Positions 6,152-59,185 of a stretch of 64,000 nucleotides of DNA are shown here, in pieces. A program made the translations under genes and the position numbers. How positions within the stretch are numbered: position 1 is the first letter of the stretch; each line of letters begins with the position of its first letter. The notes beneath the pieces were generated by a model, which searched no databases, was not told where the DNA came from, and worked only from the letters and a program-made list of their open reading frames with translations. The stretch is from the IMG/VR virus record IMGVR_UViG_3300035698_013060, positions 62,001 through 126,000 of that record; one strand, written 5' to 3'.

Positions 6152-6159
6152 CATATTAT
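6152..6159 (+). promoter_or_regulatory. Putative early promoter core CATATTAT
   Basis: Recurrent intergenic NATATTAN motif; followed by a leader hairpin at about 6165-6206 and a run of small accessory genes. Confidence 0.55.
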
Positions 6160-12483: not shown

Positions 12484-12606
12484 ATGGGTAAAATTCAAGT
12501 CGAAGCATCTATTGAGACCGAGAGAATAGAGAAGATCCCACGTATGCGGCGTAGGACCTTCATAAAAAGCAAGCGGTGTAAAAGTCGTAAGAGGTCTAGA
12601 AAGTAA
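12484..12606 (+). CDS. Small very basic protein (40 aa), not in the ORF track
   Basis: MGKIQVEASIETERIEKIPRMRRRTFIKSKRCKSRKRSRK; fills the gap before the terminator. Confidence 0.5.
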   Translation: MGKIQVEASIETERIEKIPRMRRRTFIKSKRCKSRKRSRK

Positions 12607-12623
12607 GTCTCTCGGCAGTATTC

Positions 12624-12651
12624 ATCCCCCTACCCAATTGGGTAGGGGGAT
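12624..12651. terminator. Hairpin between convergent operons
   Basis: atccccctaccc-aatt-gggtagggggat perfect inverted repeat. Confidence 0.8.
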
Positions 12652-12678
12652 TGAACATCGAGATTCTTCTTCAGGATT

Positions 12679-13272
12679 CTACTGGAGAGCAGCTTCGACG
12701 GTCTCGATCATCTCAATTTTCGTGGATCTCATGTCGAGTTCGATGGGAGGTTCCATTTCGGCGGCGTAGGCGACGAGTTCTTTCTTCGTCATGGCTTCGA
12801 TGAGGCTGAGGTCAACTTCCTCTTCATCGACTTCCTCTTCATCGACTTCCTCTTCGTCAACTTCCTCTTCGTCAACTTCCTCTTCGTCAACTTCCTCTTC
12901 GTCAACTTCCTCTTCGTCAACTTCCTCTTCGTCAACTTCCTCTTCGTCAACTTCCTCGAGTTTCGGAGTCTCGAGAATGGCTTCATCTTCCTTGGGCTCC
13001 GGAATGATTTCTTCCGCAGGTTCTATGCCACCAGGGACATCGTCCACGGCCCCGGGATTGGGAGCATCCGGAATCGAAGCTTCCACCTTCTTCGGTGTGG
13101 ATGGTCTTGGGGCCTTCCTGGTCTCTTTGATGATCACCTTGTATCCCATACTCTTCAACTTGTCGGCAACCGACTTCGGTACCGAGATGTTGCTCAGGAT
13201 AGGTCCCCTACGGTTGATGAAGGGGATAACCCCGGAGTGGTTTACCGTGATAAGAACTTTTGGATCTGCCAT
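12679..13272 (-). CDS. Protein with (EEEVD)n acidic tandem repeat and C-terminal Rho-N/HeH-like helical domain
   Basis: Ten EEVD units; LSLIEAMTKKELVAYA...STKIEMI tail. Confidence 0.8.
   Translation of the reverse strand: MADPKVLITVNHSGVIPFINRRGPILSNISVPKSVADKLKSMGYKVIIKETRKAPRPSTPKKVEASIPDAPNPGAVDDVPGGIEPAEEIIPEPKEDEAILETPKLEEVDEEEVDEEEVDEEEVDEEEVDEEEVDEEEVDEEEVDEEEVDEEEVDLSLIEAMTKKELVAYAAEMEPPIELDMRSTKIEMIETVEAALQ
12811..12957. repeat. 15-bp tandem repeat (gtcaacttcctcttc), about 10 copies
   Basis: Visible directly; two copies read atcgacttcctcttc. Confidence 0.97.
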
Positions 13273-14060: not shown

Positions 14061-15310
14061 GGCGACGTTACCCCCAGTATACTCTCCTCAATCGCCTTAA
14101 GGACGATGAGAGCACATGGAATGAGCATAAAGCTCCTAAGGTCCAGCATGATCTCAATGTCAGGTACCATGTCGAGAAGAGCGTTATGGTCGATGACTTC
14201 AGACTCAGTGTCGAGTCTGTCAGCCAAGTAGGTAATGATAAAGTTCTCCAATTCTCTTCCTGTTCCCGGGAACAGAGTGAGAGATTGAGCCTGTGCCAGG
14301 AAACCAGGATCACCCACGGCTATCTGAAACGCATCGGTCGGAACAGTCACACATGGATGCATGGCTTCGTAGTAATCACCTGGAAAAGCGAAGAAGATCG
14401 ACGTTACTTCACTGGACCTATAAGCTACGAGAGCTTCCGACGTGATGCTCATCAACGTCTCGGGGTGCCTGATCGCGTAATAGAATGTTTGCTTTTCTAC
14501 AGCGAGCATAGACACGTACGCCTCTCTCCGTGGAGAGAGTAAGACTGATGTATTATCGTAGAAACTAGTCTGAAACTCCAGAGCTTGCGTGATTTCCATC
14601 GAATGATGGGCCATATAGTTGACGATCTTCCCAGGGAGCGAACCATCGTAGTGTAGAAACGATGAGGTAGATCTATCATAGAAGTAGGTCCCGTACAAGT
14701 CAGACATCTGTTCCCTGAAGCTCCGGCATCTCCTGAGAGATTGGGCTAGGGTACTCTTTAGAATTGGAGTTCTGTTGTTCTCGTAGTCTGTGACACTAAA
14801 TTCAAGCTCATCATCCTTCTGCTCTTCCACCTGCGCTAAAGTCTCCGAAGAGAGCCTTATAGTCAGCTGATTGAAGCGCTTGGAATTCATGATGGACTTG
14901 GAGACTGATGTCACCTGGAACATGGCAACCACGATGGTCCCAGCATCATCGTATTCGATGGCAATGAAATCATCAGGGAACGGCGTTATCGTTCCAGGAA
15001 GAATCAAAGCCGGTGAGGATACTTCAGCCTCTGGGCCGAACGTTCCTGCACTGAGATCCAACGTCAGTTGTTCCAGTCCGTAGATCGGGAAACTGTCGAT
15101 CCTATTAAAGCGAACAGGGCTTTCGTCGCCTGCTACCTGGTATACAACGTCAAGGTGAGCATCCTGACTAGAAGCTGATACCTTCTTATTGTAGTACGCT
15201 AGGTAGCTTGGGGCTGACGACAGCATGTCGCTGTAGTCTTCCAAAGCGTTTGTCAGATTCTCTTGGATCTGATGCTGAATGATCCCTTGATCGTCAAGTA
15301 TTCTGGCCAT
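14057..15310 (-). CDS. Probable virion structural protein
   Basis: 417 aa; PVRFNRIDSFPIYG and ILPGTITPFPDDF motifs recalled from AR9/phiKZ-like structural proteins. Confidence 0.6.
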   Translation of the reverse strand: MARILDDQGIIQHQIQENLTNALEDYSDMLSSAPSYLAYYNKKVSASSQDAHLDVVYQVAGDESPVRFNRIDSFPIYGLEQLTLDLSAGTFGPEAEVSSPALILPGTITPFPDDFIAIEYDDAGTIVVAMFQVTSVSKSIMNSKRFNQLTIRLSSETLAQVEEQKDDELEFSVTDYENNRTPILKSTLAQSLRRCRSFREQMSDLYGTYFYDRSTSSFLHYDGSLPGKIVNYMAHHSMEITQALEFQTSFYDNTSVLLSPRREAYVSMLAVEKQTFYYAIRHPETLMSITSEALVAYRSSEVTSIFFAFPGDYYEAMHPCVTVPTDAFQIAVGDPGFLAQAQSLTLFPGTGRELENFIITYLADRLDTESEVIDHNALLDMVPDIEIMLDLRSFMLIPCALIVLKAIEESILGVTSP

Positions 15311-16113: not shown

Positions 16114-16527
16114 TCAGCGTCGGATATCAAATCCGACAGCTATGATAGCTTTGAAGGCCTCTTCCTCACCGCCAAACTTCCACTCAGCAGCATACCCCAA
16201 ATGCATTCTTGAGAACTCTACAGATCCGTTTGCTAGGACATAGTAACGATGAATGCCGCCGTTACCATAGATCTCAGCAATGATATCCCTGGTTTTCACC
16301 AGTTCCATCAGGTTTTCCTTGCGATACTTTTCGTCCCTTACACAGTCCAATTCCATACGGAGTTTCAACAGGCGTCCTTCAGCCCATTCAAACGAGAGAG
16401 TATCAGGTCTCTCTTCGTTGTATCCAGGTCCATACATCGGATAATCCCGATCATACGACCCTTTTCCTTCAATCGCGTCATACGCAACGCGAACCTTGTC
16501 CACACTATCAACCATCAAGTTTATCAT
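16114..16527 (-). CDS. Hypothetical protein
   Basis: GGAGAGG RBS; CATATTAC motif upstream at 16609-16616. Confidence 0.7.
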   Translation of the reverse strand: MINLMVDSVDKVRVAYDAIEGKGSYDRDYPMYGPGYNEERPDTLSFEWAEGRLLKLRMELDCVRDEKYRKENLMELVKTRDIIAEIYGNGGIHRYYVLANGSVEFSRMHLGYAAEWKFGGEEEAFKAIIAVGFDIRR

Positions 16528-16707
16528 ATCCTCTCCCTCTCAATCTCTCCTTCAACATGATAGGTGTAGAGTAACCTAAGCTCAATGAAAATCATGGAGC
16601 TTACGAATGTAATATGTATCAAAGAAAGAGGTATTTACGGGAAGAAAAGTAAAACTCCCTTACCCGGAAGATCCAGGTAAGGGGTTTCTATCTTTACATG
16701 TACGATG

Positions 16708-19284: not shown

Positions 19285-19400
19285 GTCTCCTCCTCATATT
19301 GGCTATTTACAAGTACGCCAACAAACACCTCGTACCCCTATGAGTCAGCATTTCATTACTGATCTACATGTGATAGGAGTACGAGGTATTGTGACGGAAC

Positions 19401-19721
19401 CTATTTCGAACTGTCCTGAGTGTCGGCTTCAGGAACATCGACCTCATGAGCATCGAAATCATCAGGACCGATGGCCTCAGAATCATTGTCTTCTTTTTCG
19501 ACGTTTCCGAGGGATCCGACTTCCATGTACTCGTCGTACTGGACCTCAGAGATTTCATGGTAGGAGATCAACGTGATCTCTTCCTGAGGCCGGGACTTGC
19601 GACACTGAATGGCCCAGAGAATCGGATCGCCAGTGACGAAGCCATTCTCAATGTGGGGACCGCGAGCTTTGCCGTCAACCTGAACGCGGAAGTAACTGAC
19701 GAAGTAACGTTTCTCGGGCAT
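19401..19721 (-). CDS. Hypothetical protein
   Basis: AGGAG RBS; AACATCGAATCA motif at 19787-19798. Confidence 0.7.
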   Translation of the reverse strand: MPEKRYFVSYFRVQVDGKARGPHIENGFVTGDPILWAIQCRKSRPQEEITLISYHEISEVQYDEYMEVGSLGNVEKEDNDSEAIGPDDFDAHEVDVPEADTQDSSK

Positions 19722-21251: not shown

Positions 21252-21377
21252 TCTTCTCCTCCTGGGTTATATAGGGGATCCTTTCCCCGACTCTGCTCTA
21301 ATATATGATGGAAAATTGGGTTAGAGGACCCCATCGGCCTAAGCCGATGAGGCACCTCAGGTAGCAGAGCTGTTTTG

Positions 21378-22385
21378 TTAGACAGTGGTGCCAGTGGCAT
21401 CTACCCAGTTGGTTCCATCGAACCAAATCGGCTGACCGAGAGTGGTATCGAAGTAGTATTCGTAGTCAGCAGGACTTCCAGGTCTTGAACCTGTGACGCC
21501 GCCTTGGATCAACTGCTTACCATCAATGGCAGTCTGAAGGCCGGTGACATTGGCGATGGTATGAACGTGAGAAGTCGCAGCCTTACCATCAATGGCAGTC
21601 TGAAGGCCGGTGACATTGGCGATGGTATGAACATGGCTTGTAGCCGCTTTACCATCGATCGCTGTCTGAAGACCGGTGACATCTGCGATAGCATGTGCAT
21701 CTGCAGCTTGATGAGCGCTGATAGCACTGGCTGGAGCATCACCTTGAGCGACACTACCTGCACCTGTACCGACGTCTCTTACAGCTGAATCACCGAGACC
21801 TGTGATAGCTGCAGCTGCGTGAATATGACCAGTCGCGGCCTTGCCATCAAGAGCTGTCTGAAGACCGGTGACATCTGCGATAGCATGGGCGTCAGCAGCT
21901 TGATGAGCGCTAATAGCACTCGCTGCCGTGCCAGTCGGATCATAGACTCCTGAATGATCATGAACGATCGGAGCCTTACCATCGATTTGTGCTTGAAGTC
22001 CGGTAACATCCGAAACGATATGAGCGTGAACAGTCTGAGCCTTCCCGTCCAGCGACGTCTGAAGACCTGTCACATCAGAGATGATATGTGCATGGATCAA
22101 CGGAGATTTGGCGTCCAGAAGTCCTTGCAACCCTGATACGCCACCGACGGTGTGTCCATGTCCGGTATCGGTTTTCCCGTCGAGAATTCCTTGCAAACCG
22201 TCGACATTCCCCACGGTATGCGTGTGAACTGTCGGGGCCTTCTCATCAAGGGCGACTTGCAAAGACGATACGTCGTTGATGACATGTCCGTGAGCACCGA
22301 GTCCGGCCTGTTGCTTGTCGTTAACCCTCAGATTTAAGAGGGCCAGATGACTGATTGGTACTACTTGTTCTGTTGGAGAGGCCAT
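21378..22385 (-). CDS. Tail-fibre-like protein with HxH-x-I-x-DVTGLQ-x2-LDGK repeats
   Basis: About 22-aa His-rich phage tail repeats; C-terminal GSRP...YFDTTLGQPIWF module; late motif AACAGATTATTA at 22428-22439. Confidence 0.8.
   Translation of the reverse strand: MASPTEQVVPISHLALLNLRVNDKQQAGLGAHGHVINDVSSLQVALDEKAPTVHTHTVGNVDGLQGILDGKTDTGHGHTVGGVSGLQGLLDAKSPLIHAHIISDVTGLQTSLDGKAQTVHAHIVSDVTGLQAQIDGKAPIVHDHSGVYDPTGTAASAISAHQAADAHAIADVTGLQTALDGKAATGHIHAAAAITGLGDSAVRDVGTGAGSVAQGDAPASAISAHQAADAHAIADVTGLQTAIDGKAATSHVHTIANVTGLQTAIDGKAATSHVHTIANVTGLQTAIDGKQLIQGGVTGSRPGSPADYEYYFDTTLGQPIWFDGTNWVDATGTTV
21517..21632. repeat. Internal direct repeat (50-bp exact block, 66-bp period)
   Basis: ttaccatcaatggcagtctgaaggccggtgacattggcgatggtatgaac at 21517 and 21583. 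Confidence 0.9.
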
Positions 22386-47532: not shown

Positions 47533-47630
47533 TGGTCTCGGGGGCGGGACTCGAACCCGCAACGGCCTCCTCATTTCCGGACTTTATAACCTACCGGCAG
47601 GAACACGTCTACCAATTTTGTTACCCCGAG
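47533..47630 (-). tRNA. tRNA-like RNA with Leu-type D-loop and non-canonical 27-nt anticodon loop (identity unassignable)
   Basis: Acceptor CTCGGGG/CCCCGAG plus ACCA; T-arm GCGGG-TTCGAGT-CCCGC; D-loop AATTGGTAGA. Confidence 0.75.
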
Positions 47631-49962: not shown

Positions 49963-50676
49963 CTAGAAGGGGATATTGTCACTGTGCTCGGGACTAATAT
50001 CTGTTTCATCACCCATTGGGAGGAGACCACTTATCTCGGAGACGAATTCCTCTAAGGTCCTAGAGGGGTTGTATCGTATATCCAATTTGAGGATCTTATT
50101 GATCTCCATTATGTCTTCTTTCCGACGAAGGAGAGCGCATTCAAGCTTCTTTAGCGTATCTCTGTTCATATCCCTGTGGTATTGCTTCACAAACTCCCGG
50201 ACGTTCCCATGAACGGCCGAGATCGGGATGAGAACCTTACCAGAATGAACGAGGTCATGGACAGTCTTGGAGAGCGGTACGACTCCTACCATATCTTTAT
50301 AGTGGAGTCTTATTACTTCATTCGCTATAGTGAATGAGCTAAAGGGTTTTTCGTTTTTCCTGATGAATTGATTAGCGACTGCATCAGTTATCTCATACAA
50401 TGTCAAGGGACTATGATGAATCTCAATCCTGACATCCTGAGATGTAACTTTAGATAAGAAAATATCCTCATCCAGGTCGACTTCATCTCTCAGGTAGGTA
50501 ACATAATCCTTGTATTCCAAACACCGACGAATGATGGACTCCACAGCTTTGACAAAGCGGTCCCACCGTTTCTTGTCTATAGCGTACGAAGGATAAAATT
50601 CAACTAAGCCGTAGCTGTCGCCATCGACCCCGTCAACTTCTCTTTCTATCTCTCTATCGTTTTTGCTCTTGGGCAT
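49963..50676 (-). CDS. HNH/His-Me-finger-like protein, paralog B
   Basis: IEIHHSPLTL...VGVVPLSKTVHDLVHSGK; paralogous to 52147-52866. Confidence 0.7.
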   Translation of the reverse strand: MPKSKNDREIEREVDGVDGDSYGLVEFYPSYAIDKKRWDRFVKAVESIIRRCLEYKDYVTYLRDEVDLDEDIFLSKVTSQDVRIEIHHSPLTLYEITDAVANQFIRKNEKPFSSFTIANEVIRLHYKDMVGVVPLSKTVHDLVHSGKVLIPISAVHGNVREFVKQYHRDMNRDTLKKLECALLRRKEDIMEINKILKLDIRYNPSRTLEEFVSEISGLLPMGDETDISPEHSDNIPF

Positions 50677-50699
50677 AGTTCTCTCCGGAATTGTGATTA

Positions 50700-51318
50700 T
50701 GAAGAAGAAATGAAAGTCCTGTGAAGGACTATCATTCTCGCGTTGTTCTGTACTACATCGATACACGTACAGAACGGTGGCTACGCAGCTGGAGGCCTAT
50801 TGAGGGCTTAATGACTGCGCGGTTTCCTAGCCATGGCGTGGTGAAGGTTTTATGGTCTCTCACCAAACCTGATAGGACTCCCCTTCCGCCAAATCAGAAC
50901 GGTATCTGTAGGGAGACTCAACTGGGTCCATTCGGGCCCGGAGGAGCATGGCTTTTTGACGGGCCACATCGCGATGATAGATATATTCACCCGTCGCGCG
51001 TTCGAGTGCCCTTCTATCCTCAGGGAGGACTTTGCGAAGCAGGTCCCATGACCTTTTTCCTTGTAGAGGTGGATTCGTATCCACTTGCTGCTTCGACGGC
51101 CTGTCAGGTGGCAATCGGCGGATGCACTTTCCCTCCGCAGGAGCTCCTCTTACCTCGGAGCATGGTTGGGAAGGGGTTGAACTGGAGGCTGTGGACTAGT
51201 CTCACCGATGATTCCAAGCATCTTCGAGGAGGGGTTGAGGTCAGTGTCCAACCGACCTATCCTCCTGAATCGAATAGGGACCAAGGAGTCTCATAGCGAG
51301 ACTCAGATTCTCCAGTTC
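50700..51318 (-). ncRNA. Large (about 610 nt) highly structured non-coding RNA, unclassified
   Basis: CATATTAC motif at 51325-51332, nested long-range stems, more than 10 hairpins, terminator-like 3' end at 50700-50738. Confidence 0.7.
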
Positions 51319-51324
51319 GTCTTA

Positions 51325-51332
51325 GTAATATG
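51325..51332 (-). promoter_or_regulatory. Putative early promoter core CATATTAC
   Basis: Recurrent motif directly before the RNA's first stem. Confidence 0.6.
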
Positions 51333-51413
51333 ATATAGAAAAGGCATTAGTTACGTCTGGTATCTCAAGACTCCATAGTAAGCCATACACGCATGCTCAC
51401 TCCATTTCAAATA

Positions 51414-51860
51414 CTACTTCTCGCGGGCAACGCCCTTCATCTTCTCGAAGGTACGCAGACCACCCATACCAAGCATCGCTAGGACCAGCTGCATGAGTTG
51501 TCCCACCTGGATCTTTGGTAGCTCAGCGAGGGCCAGATTCTCAGGCTTGAAGAATACTACCATCCACTCAGCCATAGGTGCTCCGAGGAAAGACCAGAAG
51601 ATTCCCATGCCACAAACCCAACCGATAAATGGTCTCCAACCTGCAACGAAGATCGACTTGTGAGCGGCTTCAACCTTGTTGACATCGAGCTGGGCTTTAC
51701 TGATGTCCATCAAGGCCATACCGAAATCGTTCTCGAAGTCAGCTTGCTTCTCCTCAAGGAGTTGCTGAGCTTTCTCTCGTGCGTGTTTATCCGGGATAAG
51801 TCTGTCGAGTGTACTCTCCAGGATTCTCATTGCTGGTGCTGCTAAAACACTCCAGATCAT
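51414..51860 (-). CDS. Holin, 3TM (GTA-type) family
   Basis: FVAGWRPFIGWVCG...MLGMGGLRTFEKMKGV. Confidence 0.85.
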   Translation of the reverse strand: MIWSVLAAPAMRILESTLDRLIPDKHAREKAQQLLEEKQADFENDFGMALMDISKAQLDVNKVEAAHKSIFVAGWRPFIGWVCGMGIFWSFLGAPMAEWMVVFFKPENLALAELPKIQVGQLMQLVLAMLGMGGLRTFEKMKGVAREK

Positions 51861-51899
51861 GATCGTTCTCCTCGGTTTTTGTTTCTATCTCGGATCGTA

Positions 51900-52115
51900 G
51901 AAAAAGTTGGGGCTAGGAGGACGTTAGTCCCCTTCGCCCCATGTGCGCCTCCGACACTCGCAGAAGCCCGGTGGAAGCCAATCCGGGCTTCCTTCTGGTC
52001 ATCACTTGTCAGACATGTCCACTTTCGTGGTATGGTCCTCCTTGTGTTGCCCGGTCGAGTGTTACAACCCCTAGCATGGGGCCGTGTTTGCCAACCGGAA
52101 TCATGAAAATCAATT
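51900..52115 (-). ncRNA. Structured leader / small RNA (about 210 nt) with mutually exclusive P1 and terminator, upstream of the holin
   Basis: gccccatg/catggggc, acactcg/cgagtgt, ccac-GAAA-gtgg, gaagcccgg/ccgggcttc, terminator plus U-tract; CATATTAT motif at 52125-52132. Confidence 0.65.
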
Positions 52116-52146
52116 ATGTACCTTATAATATGGGCACGAACAGCGT

Positions 52147-52866
52147 TTATCCGCGTCCGGTGTCCTTACTCTCCCTAGAAATGGCTTCCGTTAGAGCTGC
52201 TATCACATCGTCCAACGTCAATGGCTCTCCGTCTACTCTAACCTCAGGGGTTGAAAACTCAAGAGTTCCTTCAGGAACCAATTCTCCTCGTTTAGAAAGC
52301 TCTATTGCTAATAGAATCTTGGAGAGGGTCTCTTCATCGATTCCTCCAACGTACGCCCTAAGAAAACCCCCTACGTTTCCGTAGATCTGAGACATACTGA
52401 CAGTTACTTTCCCAGAATGTACTAGATCGTGGATGGTTTCTGACAGTGGTAGAATTCCAACTAGTCCCATAAAGTGAGCAGCCAGGACTTCATGAGCTAC
52501 TGTCATTGTCGTTATGGTATCCCCTTGGGACAGCATATGGTCAGCAACGATCTCGATAATATCGTGAAGTGTCAAAGGACAATGATGGATTTCGATATCT
52601 ACTTTATCTTCTCCTATGATGTTTCCTAGAAAGGAACAGTTGTTTAGGTCTAGATCAATCTTACAACCGGAAATAAAGAGCTTGTATTCGATGCTAGATC
52701 GAATCATGCCTTTGACACTGTTCACAAATCTAAGCCAGTCTTTTCCGCTCAGTTCCTTGCTGAAGAAGGATTGGACGTAGAATCCACCCTCAGAGTGAAG
52801 CTCTGGACCATCTGCTGTCTCAACTGACGTTATGTTATGTAAACCATCGTGATCACTACTGTCCAT
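52147..52866 (-). CDS. HNH/His-Me-finger-like protein, paralog A
   Basis: IEIHHCPLTL...VGILPLSETIHDLVHSGK; AGGAGG RBS. Confidence 0.75.
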   Translation of the reverse strand: MDSSDHDGLHNITSVETADGPELHSEGGFYVQSFFSKELSGKDWLRFVNSVKGMIRSSIEYKLFISGCKIDLDLNNCSFLGNIIGEDKVDIEIHHCPLTLHDIIEIVADHMLSQGDTITTMTVAHEVLAAHFMGLVGILPLSETIHDLVHSGKVTVSMSQIYGNVGGFLRAYVGGIDEETLSKILLAIELSKRGELVPEGTLEFSTPEVRVDGEPLTLDDVIAALTEAISRESKDTGRG

Positions 52867-52927
52867 TAAATCCTCCTGAATCTAATTCTAGCTTCCGCAA
52901 TATTCATGTTCCAGTAGCGAAGTAGGG

Positions 52928-52984: not shown

Positions 52985-53605
52985 CTAGAGAGTATTGATG
53001 AATGTACCACGGGCGTACGCTGTCTGCTGACGCTGAAGATTGATAGACTCCTGTTCTCTAGCAGCGAAGTTGTCTTCAAAGACCGCAATCAACTTATCGA
53101 GCTCAGCTCTCACCACAGGATTTTTGGCCTTCGTTCTGAGCCGCTGAAGTTCCGGAATGAGTGTCCTACCCTTGACGATCAGACTCGTAGTGATGTTGTC
53201 GGCTTTATCATTGAGGATTCCAGCCTGAACAGCGTAAATCAGACCGACGATCACTCCAACGATGAAGATGACGAAACCTACTGAGGCTCCAGTTCCTGCT
53301 GTCAAAAGAAGTCCAATGAGCCCGATTCCTGTTCCCAGAAGGGAGATGAGAGTTTTTTCACCAGCTTCATCTTTCAAGCGACGACGCTTGGAGATAAGTC
53401 TGCTAACTTCTGCTGACCATTCACCGATACTCTTTGTGATGGAGTCCTCTTTGCCTTCTGTCAGGAAACTCTCGTCTCCTCTGAGTCCAGCCTTGGCCAT
53501 CTCGAAAGCTTCTTCTCCGAGCAGAGAGACCAAGTCTTCTCGGCTCTCTTCCAGTACTAAGAGCAACGATTCATCCAAACCATCTTGATCTTGGTAAAAA
53601 AGCAT
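52985..53605 (-). CDS. Membrane protein with MLFYQD...LDE N-terminus (putative ejected head protein)
   Basis: Acidic leader with several xxE sites, then a Gly-rich hydrophobic hairpin. Confidence 0.75.
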   Translation of the reverse strand: MLFYQDQDGLDESLLLVLEESREDLVSLLGEEAFEMAKAGLRGDESFLTEGKEDSITKSIGEWSAEVSRLISKRRRLKDEAGEKTLISLLGTGIGLIGLLLTAGTGASVGFVIFIVGVIVGLIYAVQAGILNDKADNITTSLIVKGRTLIPELQRLRTKAKNPVVRAELDKLIAVFEDNFAAREQESINLQRQQTAYARGTFINTL

Positions 53606-53647
53606 TACAGTGTCCTCGGTTGTATTATACTGTCACCGTGAAATCGC

Positions 53648-53683
53648 TAATTTGTTGTTCCCACGGGCTGGAACAAGGCATTG
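53648..53683. promoter_or_regulatory. Back-to-back divergent late promoters (AACAACAAATTA on -, AACAAGGCATTG on +)
   Basis: Both fit AACA-N4-AT-TR and face the flanking genes. Confidence 0.7.
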
Positions 53684-53722
53684 TAGACTTGAGCTTAAAT
53701 CACGAAAAGCTGGAATGGACGC

Positions 53723-56581
53723 ATGATACAGAACTTTCCAGACCTCCCGAAAAGTTCGGCTGATGAGATATCAGCGCTCCTGGAGTTTTGTCGGAGCCTG
53801 GTATTTAAAGACTCGGCTAAAGCCGAGACGGCCGAGACTTTGTTGTCCTCTAAGGCAGCATATAATCTCATTAGTGCTGAGTTAGGATTTACCCCGTTCG
53901 ATGAGTCTAGTGACCCCACTGGAGAAATGGCGCAGAATGAGATCGATGATTACGTAGAGACTAACGAGTACTACGTTACCTACTTGGAAAACCTTGGTCT
54001 AAGAGAGTCTGGTACTCTAGAAACATCAGACCAGTATAAGATGGTGGTAGCTGTAGTTAAGGCTAGAACTGCTGACGACCATGAGATAATCTTCTATCCC
54101 GAGAGCTTCGACCGGAAGCTCCGGGGTTTGTTTCTCGATTTCTTCAACACTAGTCTACACTATTACAATTCTGTTCTTCATAATGAGGGACTGGGTAAGT
54201 ACGAGCGGTACTGGAATTACGTCAACTTTGTCGTCAGTATCATGACTCTCGAGCGAATGATCACGGCCCGCATGGACTTAGCGTTTGATATCGACGCATT
54301 CGACGAACGGTCCATACGAAACATGTTTGCATCCTATGGTCTAGATTTCTTCGAGATCGTCCCGGACAAGTACCGGCGGCGCATCTTAAAGAACATCAAC
54401 TATCTTCTGGAACACAAGGGTACGACACAGGCACTTGTCAATGTCATGCAGATTTTCGGGTTTGACGACATCAAGCTTTTCAAGTACTACTTGGTCAAGG
54501 ATTTTGCCCGAGAGGGTGATGGTTCGATCAGTATGCCTCCAAACTCGTACCTCCAATTTGCTCAGGTAGAACATGATGAGGAGAACCTTGAAGCTGCTTT
54601 CTTGAGTTCGACGACTAAATGGGAAACGTTTGATTCAGTGACCGGCTCTGATCCTTACTGGCATGCTACTGAGGAAGAGATTGCAGTCCATGACTTCACA
54701 TACCTCAATACCAAGTACCTCGGAATCGACGTCAGTATTGATATGTTGAAGAGTACTCTGAACCACTCTTATTTCTACAACTACTTGTACCAGTTCAAGA
54801 AGGCTGGCGACTTGGCCATTCCTGGGAACTACAAGATGACGGTCCAGAGTTCCAAGATCAGTGGAGAACCTATTCACATCTTGGATATGATGATAGCACT
54901 CCACGCCCTTACCATGGAGATCATGGGGTGGGAAGATGTAATCGTCAAGGACTACTACCAAGTGGCGTACACATTTGCAAACGCCCATAGGAACAAGCCT
55001 ACCTTTCAAGAAGATGATCAAGCAGCTTGGGACGTTGATCTCCCAGCTTCTTCTGAAGGAGAAAAAGCTGCAGCCTTTATGGGCAATATCGAGAATCTCC
55101 TCGGGGTCGATTGGGATGATGTTGACATAGCTACCCTCAGAGATGACGTTAGGACATATCTCGAGTCCCTACCGGACAGAGGAGATCTGACTCCAGGAGA
55201 AAATTCCAACTACGACTCAGCTGACCTGGATGGTAAAGAGACGACTCCATACGACTTCGTCAGGACATACCAGGACAACCTGAAGTATGCCGCCAAGCTC
55301 AGGCAGTTGATGATAGACGAGACTAATAAGTCTCGCTATGAAGTCCTGAAGGACATCTACAACTACAAGTTCATTGCTCAATTCAATACTGAGCTCTTCA
55401 GTGGCTACGATACCTATGCTGAGTACTTGGCAGCTGAGAGCCCAGGACTCTATGCATTCATCAGTGGTAAGGATTCGAACGACGCCTTGTATGACATCAT
55501 CACCTTGATCGACAACTTCATTGACGACGCTGACGTCATCGTGGAAACATTTGCTGGAGACACTGGACTGATCGACGGAGAGATGAGTGTTACCAACAAC
55601 ATGGAGTTGTTTAACCTGACTCGGACTTTCATCAAGATGATGGTGGATACTTTCAAGGCATATACCACTCAGTTGAGAGAGTTCTCTGTCTACTACGTTC
55701 ACAGGGATCCATTTGATGATAGGATTCATCTTTTTGATGAGCTCACCCTCGGTCTCCATGGAGGCTTCTACGGGACAGATACTGCAAGGATCTCGGACGA
55801 TGGTATCGGTACAGCAGGAGGACAAGTACATCCGAGGTTCTTGGTATCGGTAGAGTATTCTGATGAGATAGGGATGTACGATAACTACCTTGTGGAACAA
55901 GGTATCAGCGAACCTCCTATTGACTACATGATCCTGGATGATAACGACGACGATCTAGAGGTTTCAGTCAGGACCAGTTACGCTCTTCCGCTTGATATGA
56001 GTGATGAGAGCGATTTCGTCATTCAGTTAGGAGACCTAAGACTAGATCCTTCCACAGGTCAACCTGTTATAGGTTCAACGTGGTATGGATCCATCAGAGC
56101 CTTAGACTCCATGGCCCTTATTTCCATTTTGAAGGTCAAGGACTACACTATCAGAGACGAGCTTCTTGACTGGGCTGAATTCGGTAATATGCCAGGAGAG
56201 GGAGATGCCGTCGGTCTAGGAGATTCATTGTATCCTTCCATCAGGCTCGTCGTCGCTCCCGGAAATCACATAGACGAACAACCCATTAGCGTCGTAGACG
56301 ATGAGCCGGGGTTTGAGCCTTTCCTTCTCAGTAGGCTATCCCCTGGAGACGGCTTCAAGTGGATGGACGGAGACCCACAGACGGACACGCTCGATCTGAC
56401 TTTCTGGGACTCTGTCCTTACGATGATCGAACAGACACCTGGACATGCGTGGTCCGGAGACCCAAATGACTACTTGACCAATCTTTCATTTCACGAGGCC
56501 AGTGACTTTCATTCCAGGTTAGTCAGGACTACTGAGGTGGCCAGGACGAGAGATGCAATAGAAATGACAGTTGTGTCGTAA
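53723..56581 (+). CDS. Large virion structural protein (baseplate-wedge-like)
   Basis: RRILKNINYLLEHKGT...IFGF...KYYLVK motif; late promoter motif. Confidence 0.65.
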   Translation: MIQNFPDLPKSSADEISALLEFCRSLVFKDSAKAETAETLLSSKAAYNLISAELGFTPFDESSDPTGEMAQNEIDDYVETNEYYVTYLENLGLRESGTLETSDQYKMVVAVVKARTADDHEIIFYPESFDRKLRGLFLDFFNTSLHYYNSVLHNEGLGKYERYWNYVNFVVSIMTLERMITARMDLAFDIDAFDERSIRNMFASYGLDFFEIVPDKYRRRILKNINYLLEHKGTTQALVNVMQIFGFDDIKLFKYYLVKDFAREGDGSISMPPNSYLQFAQVEHDEENLEAAFLSSTTKWETFDSVTGSDPYWHATEEEIAVHDFTYLNTKYLGIDVSIDMLKSTLNHSYFYNYLYQFKKAGDLAIPGNYKMTVQSSKISGEPIHILDMMIALHALTMEIMGWEDVIVKDYYQVAYTFANAHRNKPTFQEDDQAAWDVDLPASSEGEKAAAFMGNIENLLGVDWDDVDIATLRDDVRTYLESLPDRGDLTPGENSNYDSADLDGKETTPYDFVRTYQDNLKYAAKLRQLMIDETNKSRYEVLKDIYNYKFIAQFNTELFSGYDTYAEYLAAESPGLYAFISGKDSNDALYDIITLIDNFIDDADVIVETFAGDTGLIDGEMSVTNNMELFNLTRTFIKMMVDTFKAYTTQLREFSVYYVHRDPFDDRIHLFDELTLGLHGGFYGTDTARISDDGIGTAGGQVHPRFLVSVEYSDEIGMYDNYLVEQGISEPPIDYMILDDNDDDLEVSVRTSYALPLDMSDESDFVIQLGDLRLDPSTGQPVIGSTWYGSIRALDSMALISILKVKDYTIRDELLDWAEFGNMPGEGDAVGLGDSLYPSIRLVVAPGNHIDEQPISVVDDEPGFEPFLLSRLSPGDGFKWMDGDPQTDTLDLTFWDSVLTMIEQTPGHAWSGDPNDYLTNLSFHEASDFHSRLVRTTEVARTRDAIEMTVVS

Positions 56582-59119: not shown

Positions 59120-59185
59120 CATCTACCGTGAATAATGAAAACGAACTTTCATATTACGGTTGTAACAATCGTGCAATCCCCCTTT

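What the first reader, a model, noticed from the sequence alone, without database searches (positions are those of the whole stretch)
51861..52132. Riboswitch-like leader with a terminator/antiterminator switch in front of the holin
Seen on the minus strand after CATATTAT (52125-52132): P1 gccccatg (about 52082-52075) pairs with catggggc (about 51944-51937). It encloses acactcg/cgagtgt, a ccac-GAAA-gtgg tetraloop hairpin and a 9-bp gaagcccgg/ccgggcttc hairpin. The same tggggc strand is also the 5' arm of the terminator tggggc-gaaggggac-taac-gtcctcct-a-gcccca-ac-TTTTT, so P1 and the full terminator exclude each other. I see no AACA-N4-AT late motif between the terminator and the holin start. 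Inference: holin expression, and so lysis timing, is gated by a ligand- or protein-responsive RNA switch. Alternatively this is a stand-alone rod-shaped (6S-like) small RNA.
Basis: partly seen in the sequence, partly recalled or inferred. Interest (0 to 1): 0.78.

Follow-up and report, generated by a model that had tools for sequence, protein, structure and literature searches.

The report
Orphan terminator-ended leader RNA before holin
An uncultivated giant phage carries a 286-base insert just before its cell-bursting (holin) gene that looks like promoter, tightly folded RNA and transcription stop signal, so it probably dampens or insulates holin transcription, but nothing supports the idea that it is a ligand-sensing riboswitch.

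Summary
The region is strongly folded (z about -4.2 to -4.6, 13th of 638 windows). It ends in a convincing hairpin plus U-run terminator 40 nt before a real 3TM holin gene (PF11351).

The switch reading has no support:
- No Rfam family matches, even at E<10.
- No homologue was found in phage, viral, metagenome or genome collections.
- The only close relative (L002) has the two flanking genes 6 nt apart, with no leader.
- The P1/terminator competition is what shuffled upstream sequences also give (p about 0.07 to 0.3).
- Covariation cannot be tested, because only identical copies exist.

The element starts with CATATTAT. That motif recurs in non-coding DNA of this phage in promoter position.

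My best reading is a lineage-specific promoter, about 215-nt structured RNA and terminator module. It yields a short RNA and lets only read-through reach the holin. This resembles the 5'UTR terminators mapped in phiKZ and lambda's PR'-6S RNA-tR' unit before holin S. Interest is modest. A second, 737-nt non-coding stretch with the same layout follows the holin.

The parts
52125..52132 (-). CATATTAT, promoter-like motif at the 5' end of the element. A TSS near 52118 is inferred.
   Evidence: CATATTAY gives 6 hits against 2.0 expected, and 5 lie in non-coding DNA. At 16616-16609 (-) the motif sits between a terminator and a gene start 80 nt downstream. At 6152 (+) it is 74 nt upstream of a start codon. 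By analogy, RNAP-encoding jumbo phages have AT-rich early promoter motifs of about 10 nt centred near -10 (PMC7598289).
52050..52099 (-). Hairpin H1, two-tiered: an outer helix CCGGUUGG/UCGACCGG and an inner helix ACGGCCCC/GGGGUUGU with a 6-nt loop.
   Evidence: MFE and centroid structures. The inner hairpin alone folds at -12.9 kcal/mol.
52000..52049 (-). Hairpin H2, a long imperfect stem capped by CCAC-GAAA-GUGG (52030-52019).
   Evidence: MFE and centroid structures. It is kept in every alternative fold.
51962..51992 (-). Hairpin H3, a perfect 10-bp stem GGAAGCCCGG/CCGGGCUUCU with an 11-nt loop.
   Evidence: MFE and centroid structures. It is kept in every alternative fold.
51936..51960 (-).
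   Evidence: The pairings were verified base by base. Forcing P2 costs only 1.1 kcal/mol. Forcing P1 costs 6.7-9.5 kcal/mol at full length and 0-1.3 kcal/mol in the nascent RNA made from the motif's own start near 52118; nascent read-through RNA from 52146 pays 0.4-5.5.
51901..51941 (-). Intrinsic terminator: a 13-bp interrupted stem (51941-51908), then AC, then UUUUU (51905-51901).
   Evidence: -22.4 kcal/mol when folded alone. Probability 0.96 in the full-length ensemble. The reverse complement has no T-run, so it acts in one direction only.
51861..51900 (-). 40-nt spacer carrying the Shine-Dalgarno GAGGAG (51873-51868), 7 nt before the holin ATG. No promoter-like motif is present.
   Evidence: Sequence. 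No CATATTAY or AACA-N4-AT match here.
51414..51860 (-). Holin gene, 148 aa, 3TM type.
   Evidence: PF11351 at E 2.3e-19. phrog_3427 holin at E 1.6e-30. 60% identical to the L002 holin.
52147..52866 (-). Upstream gene, 239 aa, phrog_12252, function unknown, with weak HNH-like leads. Its stop codon is 245 nt before the terminator's last U.
   Evidence: phrog_12252 at E 1.6e-43. No Pfam or NCBIfam hit. No PDB fold match. Weak HNH leads. Invariant E/H motif.
50677..51413 (-). Second non-coding stretch (nc2, 737 nt) after the holin, with the same layout. It has CATATTAC at 51332-51325, a GC-rich body, and a terminator-like hairpin at 50730-50715 with a T-rich tail to about 50705. This is about 30 nt before the ATG (50676) of the second phrog_12252 paralogue.
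   Evidence: No protein family hit for its open frames. No Rfam hit. Only its 3' 200 nt is significantly structured (z -4.1).

Best explanation
nc1 (window 52132-51901, minus strand) is a lineage-specific module of promoter, structured RNA and terminator. It was gained between two genes that are adjacent and co-transcribed in the nearest relative; the alternative is that the relative lost it.

Proposed mechanism:
1. Phage RNA polymerase starts a few bases after CATATTAT.
2. It makes an RNA of about 215 nt that folds into three stable local hairpins.
3. It mostly stops at the hairpin plus U5 terminator, 40 nt before the holin start.
4. The same terminator also ends the upstream 206-aa and 239-aa gene transcript.
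5. No promoter motif lies between terminator and holin, so the holin is made only from polymerases that read through.

The module therefore acts in cis as a constitutive attenuator or insulator that lowers or delays the holin dose. An abundant short RNA is a by-product.

Shown: the sequence features, the fold significance, holin identity, absence from the relative, and orphan status.

Inferred: promoter activity of CATATTAT, actual termination by the phage polymerases, the read-through fraction, and any effect on lysis timing.
For: - The terminator is strong (-22.4 kcal/mol), one-directional and has probability 0.96 at full length.
- The fold has z -4.6 and -4.2, in the top 2% of windows, with the minus strand more structured than the plus strand.
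- GC is 0.58 against about 0.45-0.50 in the flanks.
- CATATTAY is enriched: 6 hits against 2.0 expected, 5 of the 6 in non-coding DNA. At two other sites it lies 74-80 nt before a start codon. One of those two also directly follows a terminator.
- No promoter motif lies between terminator and holin.
- In L002 (68% and 60% identical flanking proteins) the stop and start codons are 6 nt apart. Co-transcription of the holin with the upstream gene is therefore probably ancestral, and any terminator placed there must reduce holin transcription.
- In 73 other PF11351 holin loci the median distance to the upstream ORF is -4 nt. The gaps I inspected (6 of the 11 of 150 nt or more) hold small membrane-protein ORFs rather than leaders.
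- nc2 repeats the same layout.
- Precedent in a jumbo phage with its own RNAPs: phiKZ and five other phages have 42 terminators inside 5'UTRs, and 34 of them give a predominant short RNA under 250 nt plus a minor read-through transcript (PMC10914365).
- The phage in this window encodes phiKZ-like split RNAP beta subunits.
Against: - There are no transcript data for this uncultivated phage.
- CATATTAY rests on 6 sites in 64 kb. 1 of 100 shuffles reaches that count.
- It is unknown whether this phage's polymerases obey this terminator. Its stem is interrupted, its U-run is only 5 long and is offset by 2 nt, and it differs from the perfect-stem terminators elsewhere in the window.
- A plain attenuator needs only the terminator. 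It does not explain about 150 nt of extra, strongly folded RNA.
- A deletion in L002, rather than an insertion here, cannot be excluded with a single relative.
Confidence: 0.45

Rival explanations
1. Trans-acting small RNA gene (an 'RNA moron'). nc1 would be an autonomous inserted unit with its own promoter and terminator, and its product would be a roughly 215-nt RNA that acts on host or phage targets. The effect on the holin would be incidental.
For: - A promoter-like motif and a terminator bracket a GC-rich body of different composition.
- It is inserted between genes that are adjacent in the relative, which is the classical moron layout (described in PMC10914365).
- Short RNAs ended at promoter-proximal terminators can gain trans functions, for example StxS from PR'-tR' (PMC7547250).
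Against: - No target, seed or chaperone site is identifiable.
- There are no homologues, so nothing shows selection on the RNA body.
- The position 40 nt before a gene with no promoter of its own makes a cis effect unavoidable.
Confidence: 0.2
2. This is a ligand- or protein-responsive switch in which P1 (52082-52075 with 51943-51936) closes an aptamer and withholds the terminator's 5' arm, turning holin transcription on.
For: - The pairings exist.
- In a nascent transcript from about 52118 that lacks the terminator's 3' arm, the P1+P2 fold ties with the MFE, with P(P1) 0.37-0.50.
- The unpaired AACAC in H1 could serve as a toehold for the P2 3' strand (inference).
Against: - No Rfam family matches at the gathering threshold, or at E<10 in a 1.7-kb search.
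- No homologue and no covariation.
- The closest relative lacks it.
- The complementarity is not beyond chance: p 0.07, and 30% of shuffles behave the same way.
- The P1 5' strand is captured first by a local 8-bp hairpin.
- At full length P1 costs 6.7-9.5 kcal/mol.
Confidence: 0.07
3. Factor-dependent processive antitermination, like lambda Q at PR'-tR'. The promoter would be constitutively active and terminated at 51901 until a phage factor makes the polymerase terminator-resistant and releases the holin late.
For: The layout matches lambda: a promoter, an RNA of about 200 nt, a terminator, and then the holin as first gene. In lambdoid phages PR' is always on and is terminated at tR', giving 6S RNA or StxS until Q acts (PMC7547250).
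Against: - The upstream 239-aa protein has no Q-like or other antiterminator signature.
- The same protein directly abuts the holin in L002 with no terminator to overcome.
- Q acts on sigma70 holoenzyme, whereas this phage has its own RNAPs.
Confidence: 0.1
4. Non-functional filler. nc1 would be the remnant of an insertion or a decayed sequence whose hairpins and terminator are tolerated rather than selected.
For: - It is an orphan with no homologue.
- It is absent from the only relative.
- The neighbouring slot (nc2) is also remodelled: L002 has a 438-aa beta-helix gene there.
Against: - Phage genomes are compact.
- The fold is significant and strand-specific.
- A promoter-like motif and a clean hairpin plus U-run sit at the two ends.
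- There is no detectable protein remnant. tblastn with the L002 proteins gives nothing in nc1.
Confidence: 0.15

Closest known systems
Premature (5'UTR-resident) terminators and 5'UTR-derived short ncRNA candidates of phiKZ and other virulent Pseudomonas phages (Putzeys et al. 2024, PMC10914365)
   Same: A promoter is followed within 250 nt by a hairpin terminator upstream of a gene. This gives a predominant short structured RNA plus a minor read-through mRNA. It occurs in a jumbo phage that transcribes with its own split multisubunit RNAPs. Function is unknown there too.
   Different: There is no sequence relationship (blastn against 50,697 phage records). phiKZ terminators share a CCYCCCC...GGGRRGG + TTAT motif that is absent here. 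No transcript data exist for this phage. None of the phiKZ cases was reported before a holin.
Lambda PR' - 6S RNA - tR' - S (holin) late leader, and StxS of Stx phages (PMC7547250)
   Same: The layout is the same: a promoter, an RNA of about 200 nt, and an intrinsic terminator immediately before the lysis genes. The short RNA is a by-product that can acquire a function of its own.
   Different: Lambda depends on the Q protein and host sigma70 RNAP. No Q-like protein is detectable here. This phage is lytic-type and encodes its own RNAP. There is no sequence similarity.
Transcription-terminating riboswitches (Rfam classes such as ykkC, c-di-GMP, ZTP, preQ1)
   Same: A structured 5' region is followed by a terminator whose 5' arm can pair with an upstream strand.
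   Different: No covariance-model match at any threshold. There is no conservation, no ligand-related downstream gene, and the alternative pairing is not beyond chance.
6S RNA (RF00013 and relatives)
   Same: Size of about 200 nt and high structure.
   Different: No Rfam hit. The predicted fold is three separate hairpins, not a rod with a central bubble.

Membership tests
Known riboswitch classes (Rfam 15) | Match to a class covariance model (conserved aptamer sequence and structure) | tested here: not met
   No hit at the gathering threshold in the whole window. In a 1.7-kb E<10 scan there were only three chance-level snoRNA/sRNA hits.
Riboswitch or RNA switch in general | Conserved aptamer with covariation in P1 and in the expression platform across homologues | not testable with these tools
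   Only identical copies exist (L001, L010-L012, L107). No diverged homologue was found.
Riboswitch or RNA switch in general | Mutually exclusive antiterminator/terminator pairing beyond chance | tested here: not met
   The pairing is present, but 7.4% of shuffles give an equal or better duplex, and 30% of shuffles reproduce the sequester-then-terminate behaviour.
Riboswitch or RNA switch in general | Ligand- or factor-dependent change in termination | not testable with these tools
   This needs in vitro transcription or in-line probing.
6S RNA | Rod-like fold with a large central bubble that mimics an open promoter, plus a match to RF00013 | tested here: not met
   No Rfam hit. The MFE and centroid are three local hairpins plus the terminator.
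Intrinsic (factor-independent) terminator | GC-rich hairpin directly followed by a U-run on the transcribed strand | tested here: met
   A 13-bp interrupted stem at -22.4 kcal/mol, with U5 starting 2 nt after the stem. The simple scan missed it, probably because of the interrupted stem. Function with the phage RNAPs was not tested.
phiKZ-type 5'UTR premature-termination units | A TSS and a TTS under 250 nt apart, upstream of a gene, with both short and read-through transcripts | not testable with these tools
   The sequence layout fits: promoter-like motif at 52132-52125, terminator ending at 51901, ATG at 51860. Transcript ends are unknown.
Lambda Q / PR'-tR' antitermination module | A Q-family antiterminator gene next to the promoter | tested here: not met
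   The 239-aa neighbour has no Pfam, NCBIfam or PDB match to Q proteins. There are only weak HNH-like leads.
3TM holin (PF11351, GTA_holin_3TM) | Profile match above the curated cut-off | tested here: met
   70.6 bits against a cut-off of 24.8. phrog_3427 holin at E 1.6e-30.

The most novel reading that the evidence does not exclude
nc1 is the founding, so far single-genome, member of a new RNA switch that gates holin transcription, and so lysis timing, in a jumbo phage. It would toggle between the H1 hairpin state (terminator on) and the P1+P2 closed state (terminator off) in response to a metabolite or a phage or host factor. nc2 could then be a second regulatory RNA of the same lysis region.
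Probability: 0.07. Interest if true: 0.8.

Novelty: new member of a known kind. Interest (0 to 1): 0.33.

Why it matters
If the module works as proposed, it shows how a giant phage can retune the dose or timing of its holin by dropping a terminator-ended RNA unit into a previously coupled gene pair. It would also add a lysis gene to the list of jumbo-phage genes preceded by premature terminators.

In practice it marks two unusually long non-coding stretches (286 and 737 nt) flanking a holin. These are good targets for transcript mapping if this phage or a relative is ever cultured.

As it stands, the element is an orphan in one metagenomic phage with no comparative support. It does not open a general question.

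Tried and rejected
- Rfam, at gathering threshold over the whole window and at E<10 over 50600-52300: nothing relevant.
- blastn in 'distant' mode of 50700-52900 against 50,697 phage records: only the holin coding part matches.
- Exact or gapped DNA patterns from four parts of nc1 returned only the phage itself or chance hits. These covered viral contigs, metagenome contigs (the 17 hits were checked by blastn and by CM) and genome contigs. These pattern scans find only near-identical sequence, so distant homologues could have been missed.
- A single-sequence covariance model (R1, 153 nt) was run over 84 loci, including 80 loci with PF11351 holins and the closest relative. A second run covered 17 pattern-derived loci. 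There was no hit below E 0.3.
- Protein searches for closer relatives of the flanking genes in 5.8 billion proteins found only L002 (68% and 60% identity), so no synteny-based homologue can be fetched.
- nc1 against nc2: no similarity beyond the CATATTAY-TAAG motif.
- nc1 as a repeat or mobile element: no other copy in the window or in any locus. I saw no target-site duplication on comparing the junctions by eye.
- nc1 or nc2 as a decayed gene: tblastn with all L002 proteins gave nothing, the three-frame translations are full of stops, and there is no PHROG hit.
- Leader-peptide attenuation: a 26-codon ORF ends in the terminator loop but has no Shine-Dalgarno sequence, so I rejected it (and sequence).
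- Is the 239-aa neighbour an antiterminator or RNA-binding protein? AF2 model (pLDDT 74), Foldseek against PDB and AFDB, and the Atlas gave only weak HNH-like leads.
- The first z-score scan timed out. It was repeated at a coarser step.

Full report
**What the window is.** The window comes from a 241-kb IMG/VR contig. It is an uncultivated jumbo phage that encodes phiKZ-like split RNA-polymerase beta subunits: a 1403-aa protein (phrog_14872) and a 451-aa protein (phrog_2987). Identical copies occur in other assemblies (L010-L012 and L107).

**Gene order around the finding (minus strand).**
- 206-aa membrane protein (53605-52985)
- 239-aa phrog_12252 protein (52866-52147)
- 286 nt non-coding, called nc1 here (52146-51861)
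- 148-aa holin (51860-51414)
- 737 nt non-coding, called nc2 here (51413-50677)
- second phrog_12252 paralogue (50676-49963)

The holin call is solid: PF11351 at 70.6 bits against a cut-off of 24.8, and phrog_3427 at E 1.6e-30.

**Checking the observation.** Only the 3' strand of P1 is shifted by one base (51943-51936).
- The region folds far better than shuffles: z -4.6 for 231 nt.
- In a scan of the whole window on both strands (200-nt windows, dinucleotide shuffles), 51901-52100 (-) ranks 13th of 638 with z -4.2. The plus strand gives -2.7.
- GC rises to 0.58 against about 0.45-0.50 in the flanks.
- The predicted fold is not a rod. It is three local hairpins followed by the terminator:
  - H1 (52099-52050), two-tiered
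  - H2 (52049-52000), GAAA-capped
  - H3 (51992-51962), a perfect 10-bp stem
  - the terminator stem (51941-51908), then AC and U5
- The terminator hairpin alone folds at -22.4 kcal/mol and works in one direction only. The simple scan did not list it, probably because its stem is interrupted.

- In the full-length RNA, P1 costs 9.5 kcal/mol (transcript from 52146) or 6.7 kcal/mol (from about 52118). Its ensemble probability is about zero, because its 5' strand is held in the inner hairpin of H1.
- In a nascent transcript started near 52118 and ending before the terminator's 3' arm, the P1+P2 fold ties with the MFE, with P(P1) 0.37-0.50. The model is therefore physically possible.
- The property is not special. 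The best duplex between the upstream region and the terminator's 5' arm is matched by 7.4% of shuffled upstream sequences.
- 30% of shuffled upstream regions sequester that arm in the nascent RNA at least as well as the native one, and still let the terminator form at full length.

The mutually exclusive pairing is therefore no evidence for regulation.

**Comparative evidence.**
- Rfam 15 gives nothing at the gathering threshold and nothing relevant at E<10.
- blastn against 50,697 phage records matches only the holin coding sequence.
- Pattern scans of viral, metagenome and genome collections return only the phage itself or chance hits.
- A covariance model of the 153-nt core finds nothing in 84 loci, including 80 loci with PF11351 holins, nor in 17 pattern-derived loci.
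- Among 5.8 billion proteins, each flanking gene has one close relative (68% and 60% identity), on the same contig, L002.
- In L002 the two genes are 6 nt apart. There is no leader and no terminator.
- L002 is otherwise collinear with the window. In place of nc2 it carries a 438-aa beta-helix gene that leaves no trace in the window.
- Among 73 other holin loci, the median distance to the upstream ORF is -4 nt. The gaps I inspected (6 of the 11 of 150 nt or more) hold small membrane-protein ORFs, not leaders.

nc1 is therefore a lineage-specific orphan. Covariation, and linkage of homologues to holins, cannot be tested.

**Signals at the ends of nc1.**
- CATATTAY occurs 6 times in the window against 2.0 expected; 1 of 100 shuffles reaches 6.
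- Five of the six hits lie in non-coding DNA.
- At 16616-16609 (-) the motif sits just after a clean terminator and 80 nt before a start codon. At 6152 (+) it is 74 nt before a start codon.
- It also opens nc2 (51332-51325).
- RNAP-encoding jumbo phages have phage-specific, AT-rich early promoter motifs of about 10 nt centred near -10 (PMC7598289). I therefore infer that CATATTAT (52132-52125) is a promoter with a start near 52118.
- The nearest upstream AACA-N4-AT on this strand is at 53659-53650, before the 206-aa gene.
- The holin has a good Shine-Dalgarno sequence (GAGGAG, 7 nt before the ATG).

**Most likely mechanism.** nc1 is a promoter, structured RNA and terminator unit. It was placed in a formerly coupled gene pair, or lost from L002.
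- Transcripts from its own promoter, and from the upstream operon, mostly end at 51905-51901.
- Only read-through reaches the holin.
- The unit therefore attenuates or insulates holin transcription and releases a stable RNA of about 215 nt.

This matches what long-read transcript mapping found in phiKZ and five other phages. There, 42 terminators lie inside 5'UTRs, and 34 of them give a predominant short RNA under 250 nt plus a minor long transcript. phiKZ alone has 17 candidate ncRNAs of this kind, and their function is unknown (PMC10914365).

The layout also mirrors lambda's PR' - 6S RNA - tR' unit directly before holin S, whose short RNA can become a regulator (StxS; PMC7547250).

nc1 is not a member of that system. 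The neighbouring 239-aa protein shows no Q-like or RNA-binding signature, and has only weak HNH-like leads:
- Invariant E92, H94, H95, H131, H146 and H150.
- AF2 model with pLDDT 74.
- No PDB match.
- Weak AFDB and Atlas HNH hits.

**Rivals and confidence.**

| Explanation | Confidence |
|---|---|
| Constitutive attenuator with short RNA by-product | about 0.45 |
| Trans-acting small RNA gene | 0.2 |
| Tolerated filler | 0.15 |
| Factor-dependent processive antitermination | 0.1 |

The attenuator reading does not explain why about 150 nt of strongly folded RNA precedes the terminator. That unexplained part is what keeps the small-RNA and switch readings alive.

**Verdict.** The riboswitch interpretation is unsupported and at present untestable by comparison. 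The 6S-like reading is not supported. I file it as a new, orphan member of a known kind: promoter-proximal terminator units that yield short RNAs in phages. Its placement before a holin is of interest. Overall interest is modest.

Noticed in passing
window 50677-51413 (-): A 737-nt non-coding stretch (nc2, GC about 0.55) lies between the holin and the second phrog_12252 paralogue. It opens with CATATTAC (51332-51325) and ends with a terminator-like hairpin (50730-50715) about 30 nt before the ATG at 50676. It has no Rfam, PHROG or tblastn match. Only its last 200 nt are significantly structured (z -4.1). L002 has a 438-aa beta-helix (NosD-like) gene in this slot.
   Followed up: partly
window 47536-47630 (-): A tRNA-like gene lies between the 451-aa RNAP-beta-like gene and a 147-aa gene. 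It scores 32.1 bits on Rfam tRNA (gathering score 29; E 3e-5 in a local scan). It has a perfect acceptor stem, an encoded CCA and a canonical T arm. It also has about 23 nt where the anticodon stem-loop should be, and a long variable region. ARAGORN and the whole-window Rfam scan both missed it.
   Followed up: partly
window 6152-6159 (+), 16609-16616 (-), 51325-51332 (-), 52125-52132 (-), 59150-59157 (+), 56184-56191 (-): CATATTAY gives 6 hits against 2.0 expected, and 5 lie in non-coding DNA. At two sites it lies 74-80 nt before a start codon, and one of those also directly follows a terminator. It is a candidate phage promoter class, possibly early, for the virion RNAP.
   Followed up: partly
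window 53650-53659 (-), 53672-53681 (+), 11088, 22430, 24150, 34069, 35768, 41315, 59737: AACA-N4-AT is not enriched overall (38 hits against 32 expected). About ten hits do lie in intergenic DNA, 30-100 nt before start codons and on the gene's strand. This includes both sides of the divergent region at 53606-53722.
   Followed up: no
window 52147-52866 (-) and 49963-50676 (-); L002 3609-4319 and 6138-6830; L006 3952-6724: phrog_12252 proteins occur as paralogue pairs or arrays in phages. They share an invariant IEIHHxP...PLSxTIHxLVH motif (E92, H94, H95, H131, H146, H150). There are weak HNH or T5-nicking-endonuclease leads and no solved-structure match. Their function is unknown.
   Followed up: partly
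window 15101-15300 (+), 19301-19500 (-), 16501-16700 (-), 21301-21500 (both), 12501-12700 (both): These 200-nt windows fold even more significantly than nc1 (z -5.4 to -6.7). Several overlap intergenic terminators. 19285-19445 holds a long 15-bp hairpin in the 5'UTR of the 340-aa gene.
   Followed up: no
window 52985-53605 (-): A 206-aa predicted membrane protein (weak DUF2207_C hit) lies just upstream of the 239-aa gene and has no counterpart in L002. It may belong to the lysis region.
   Followed up: no
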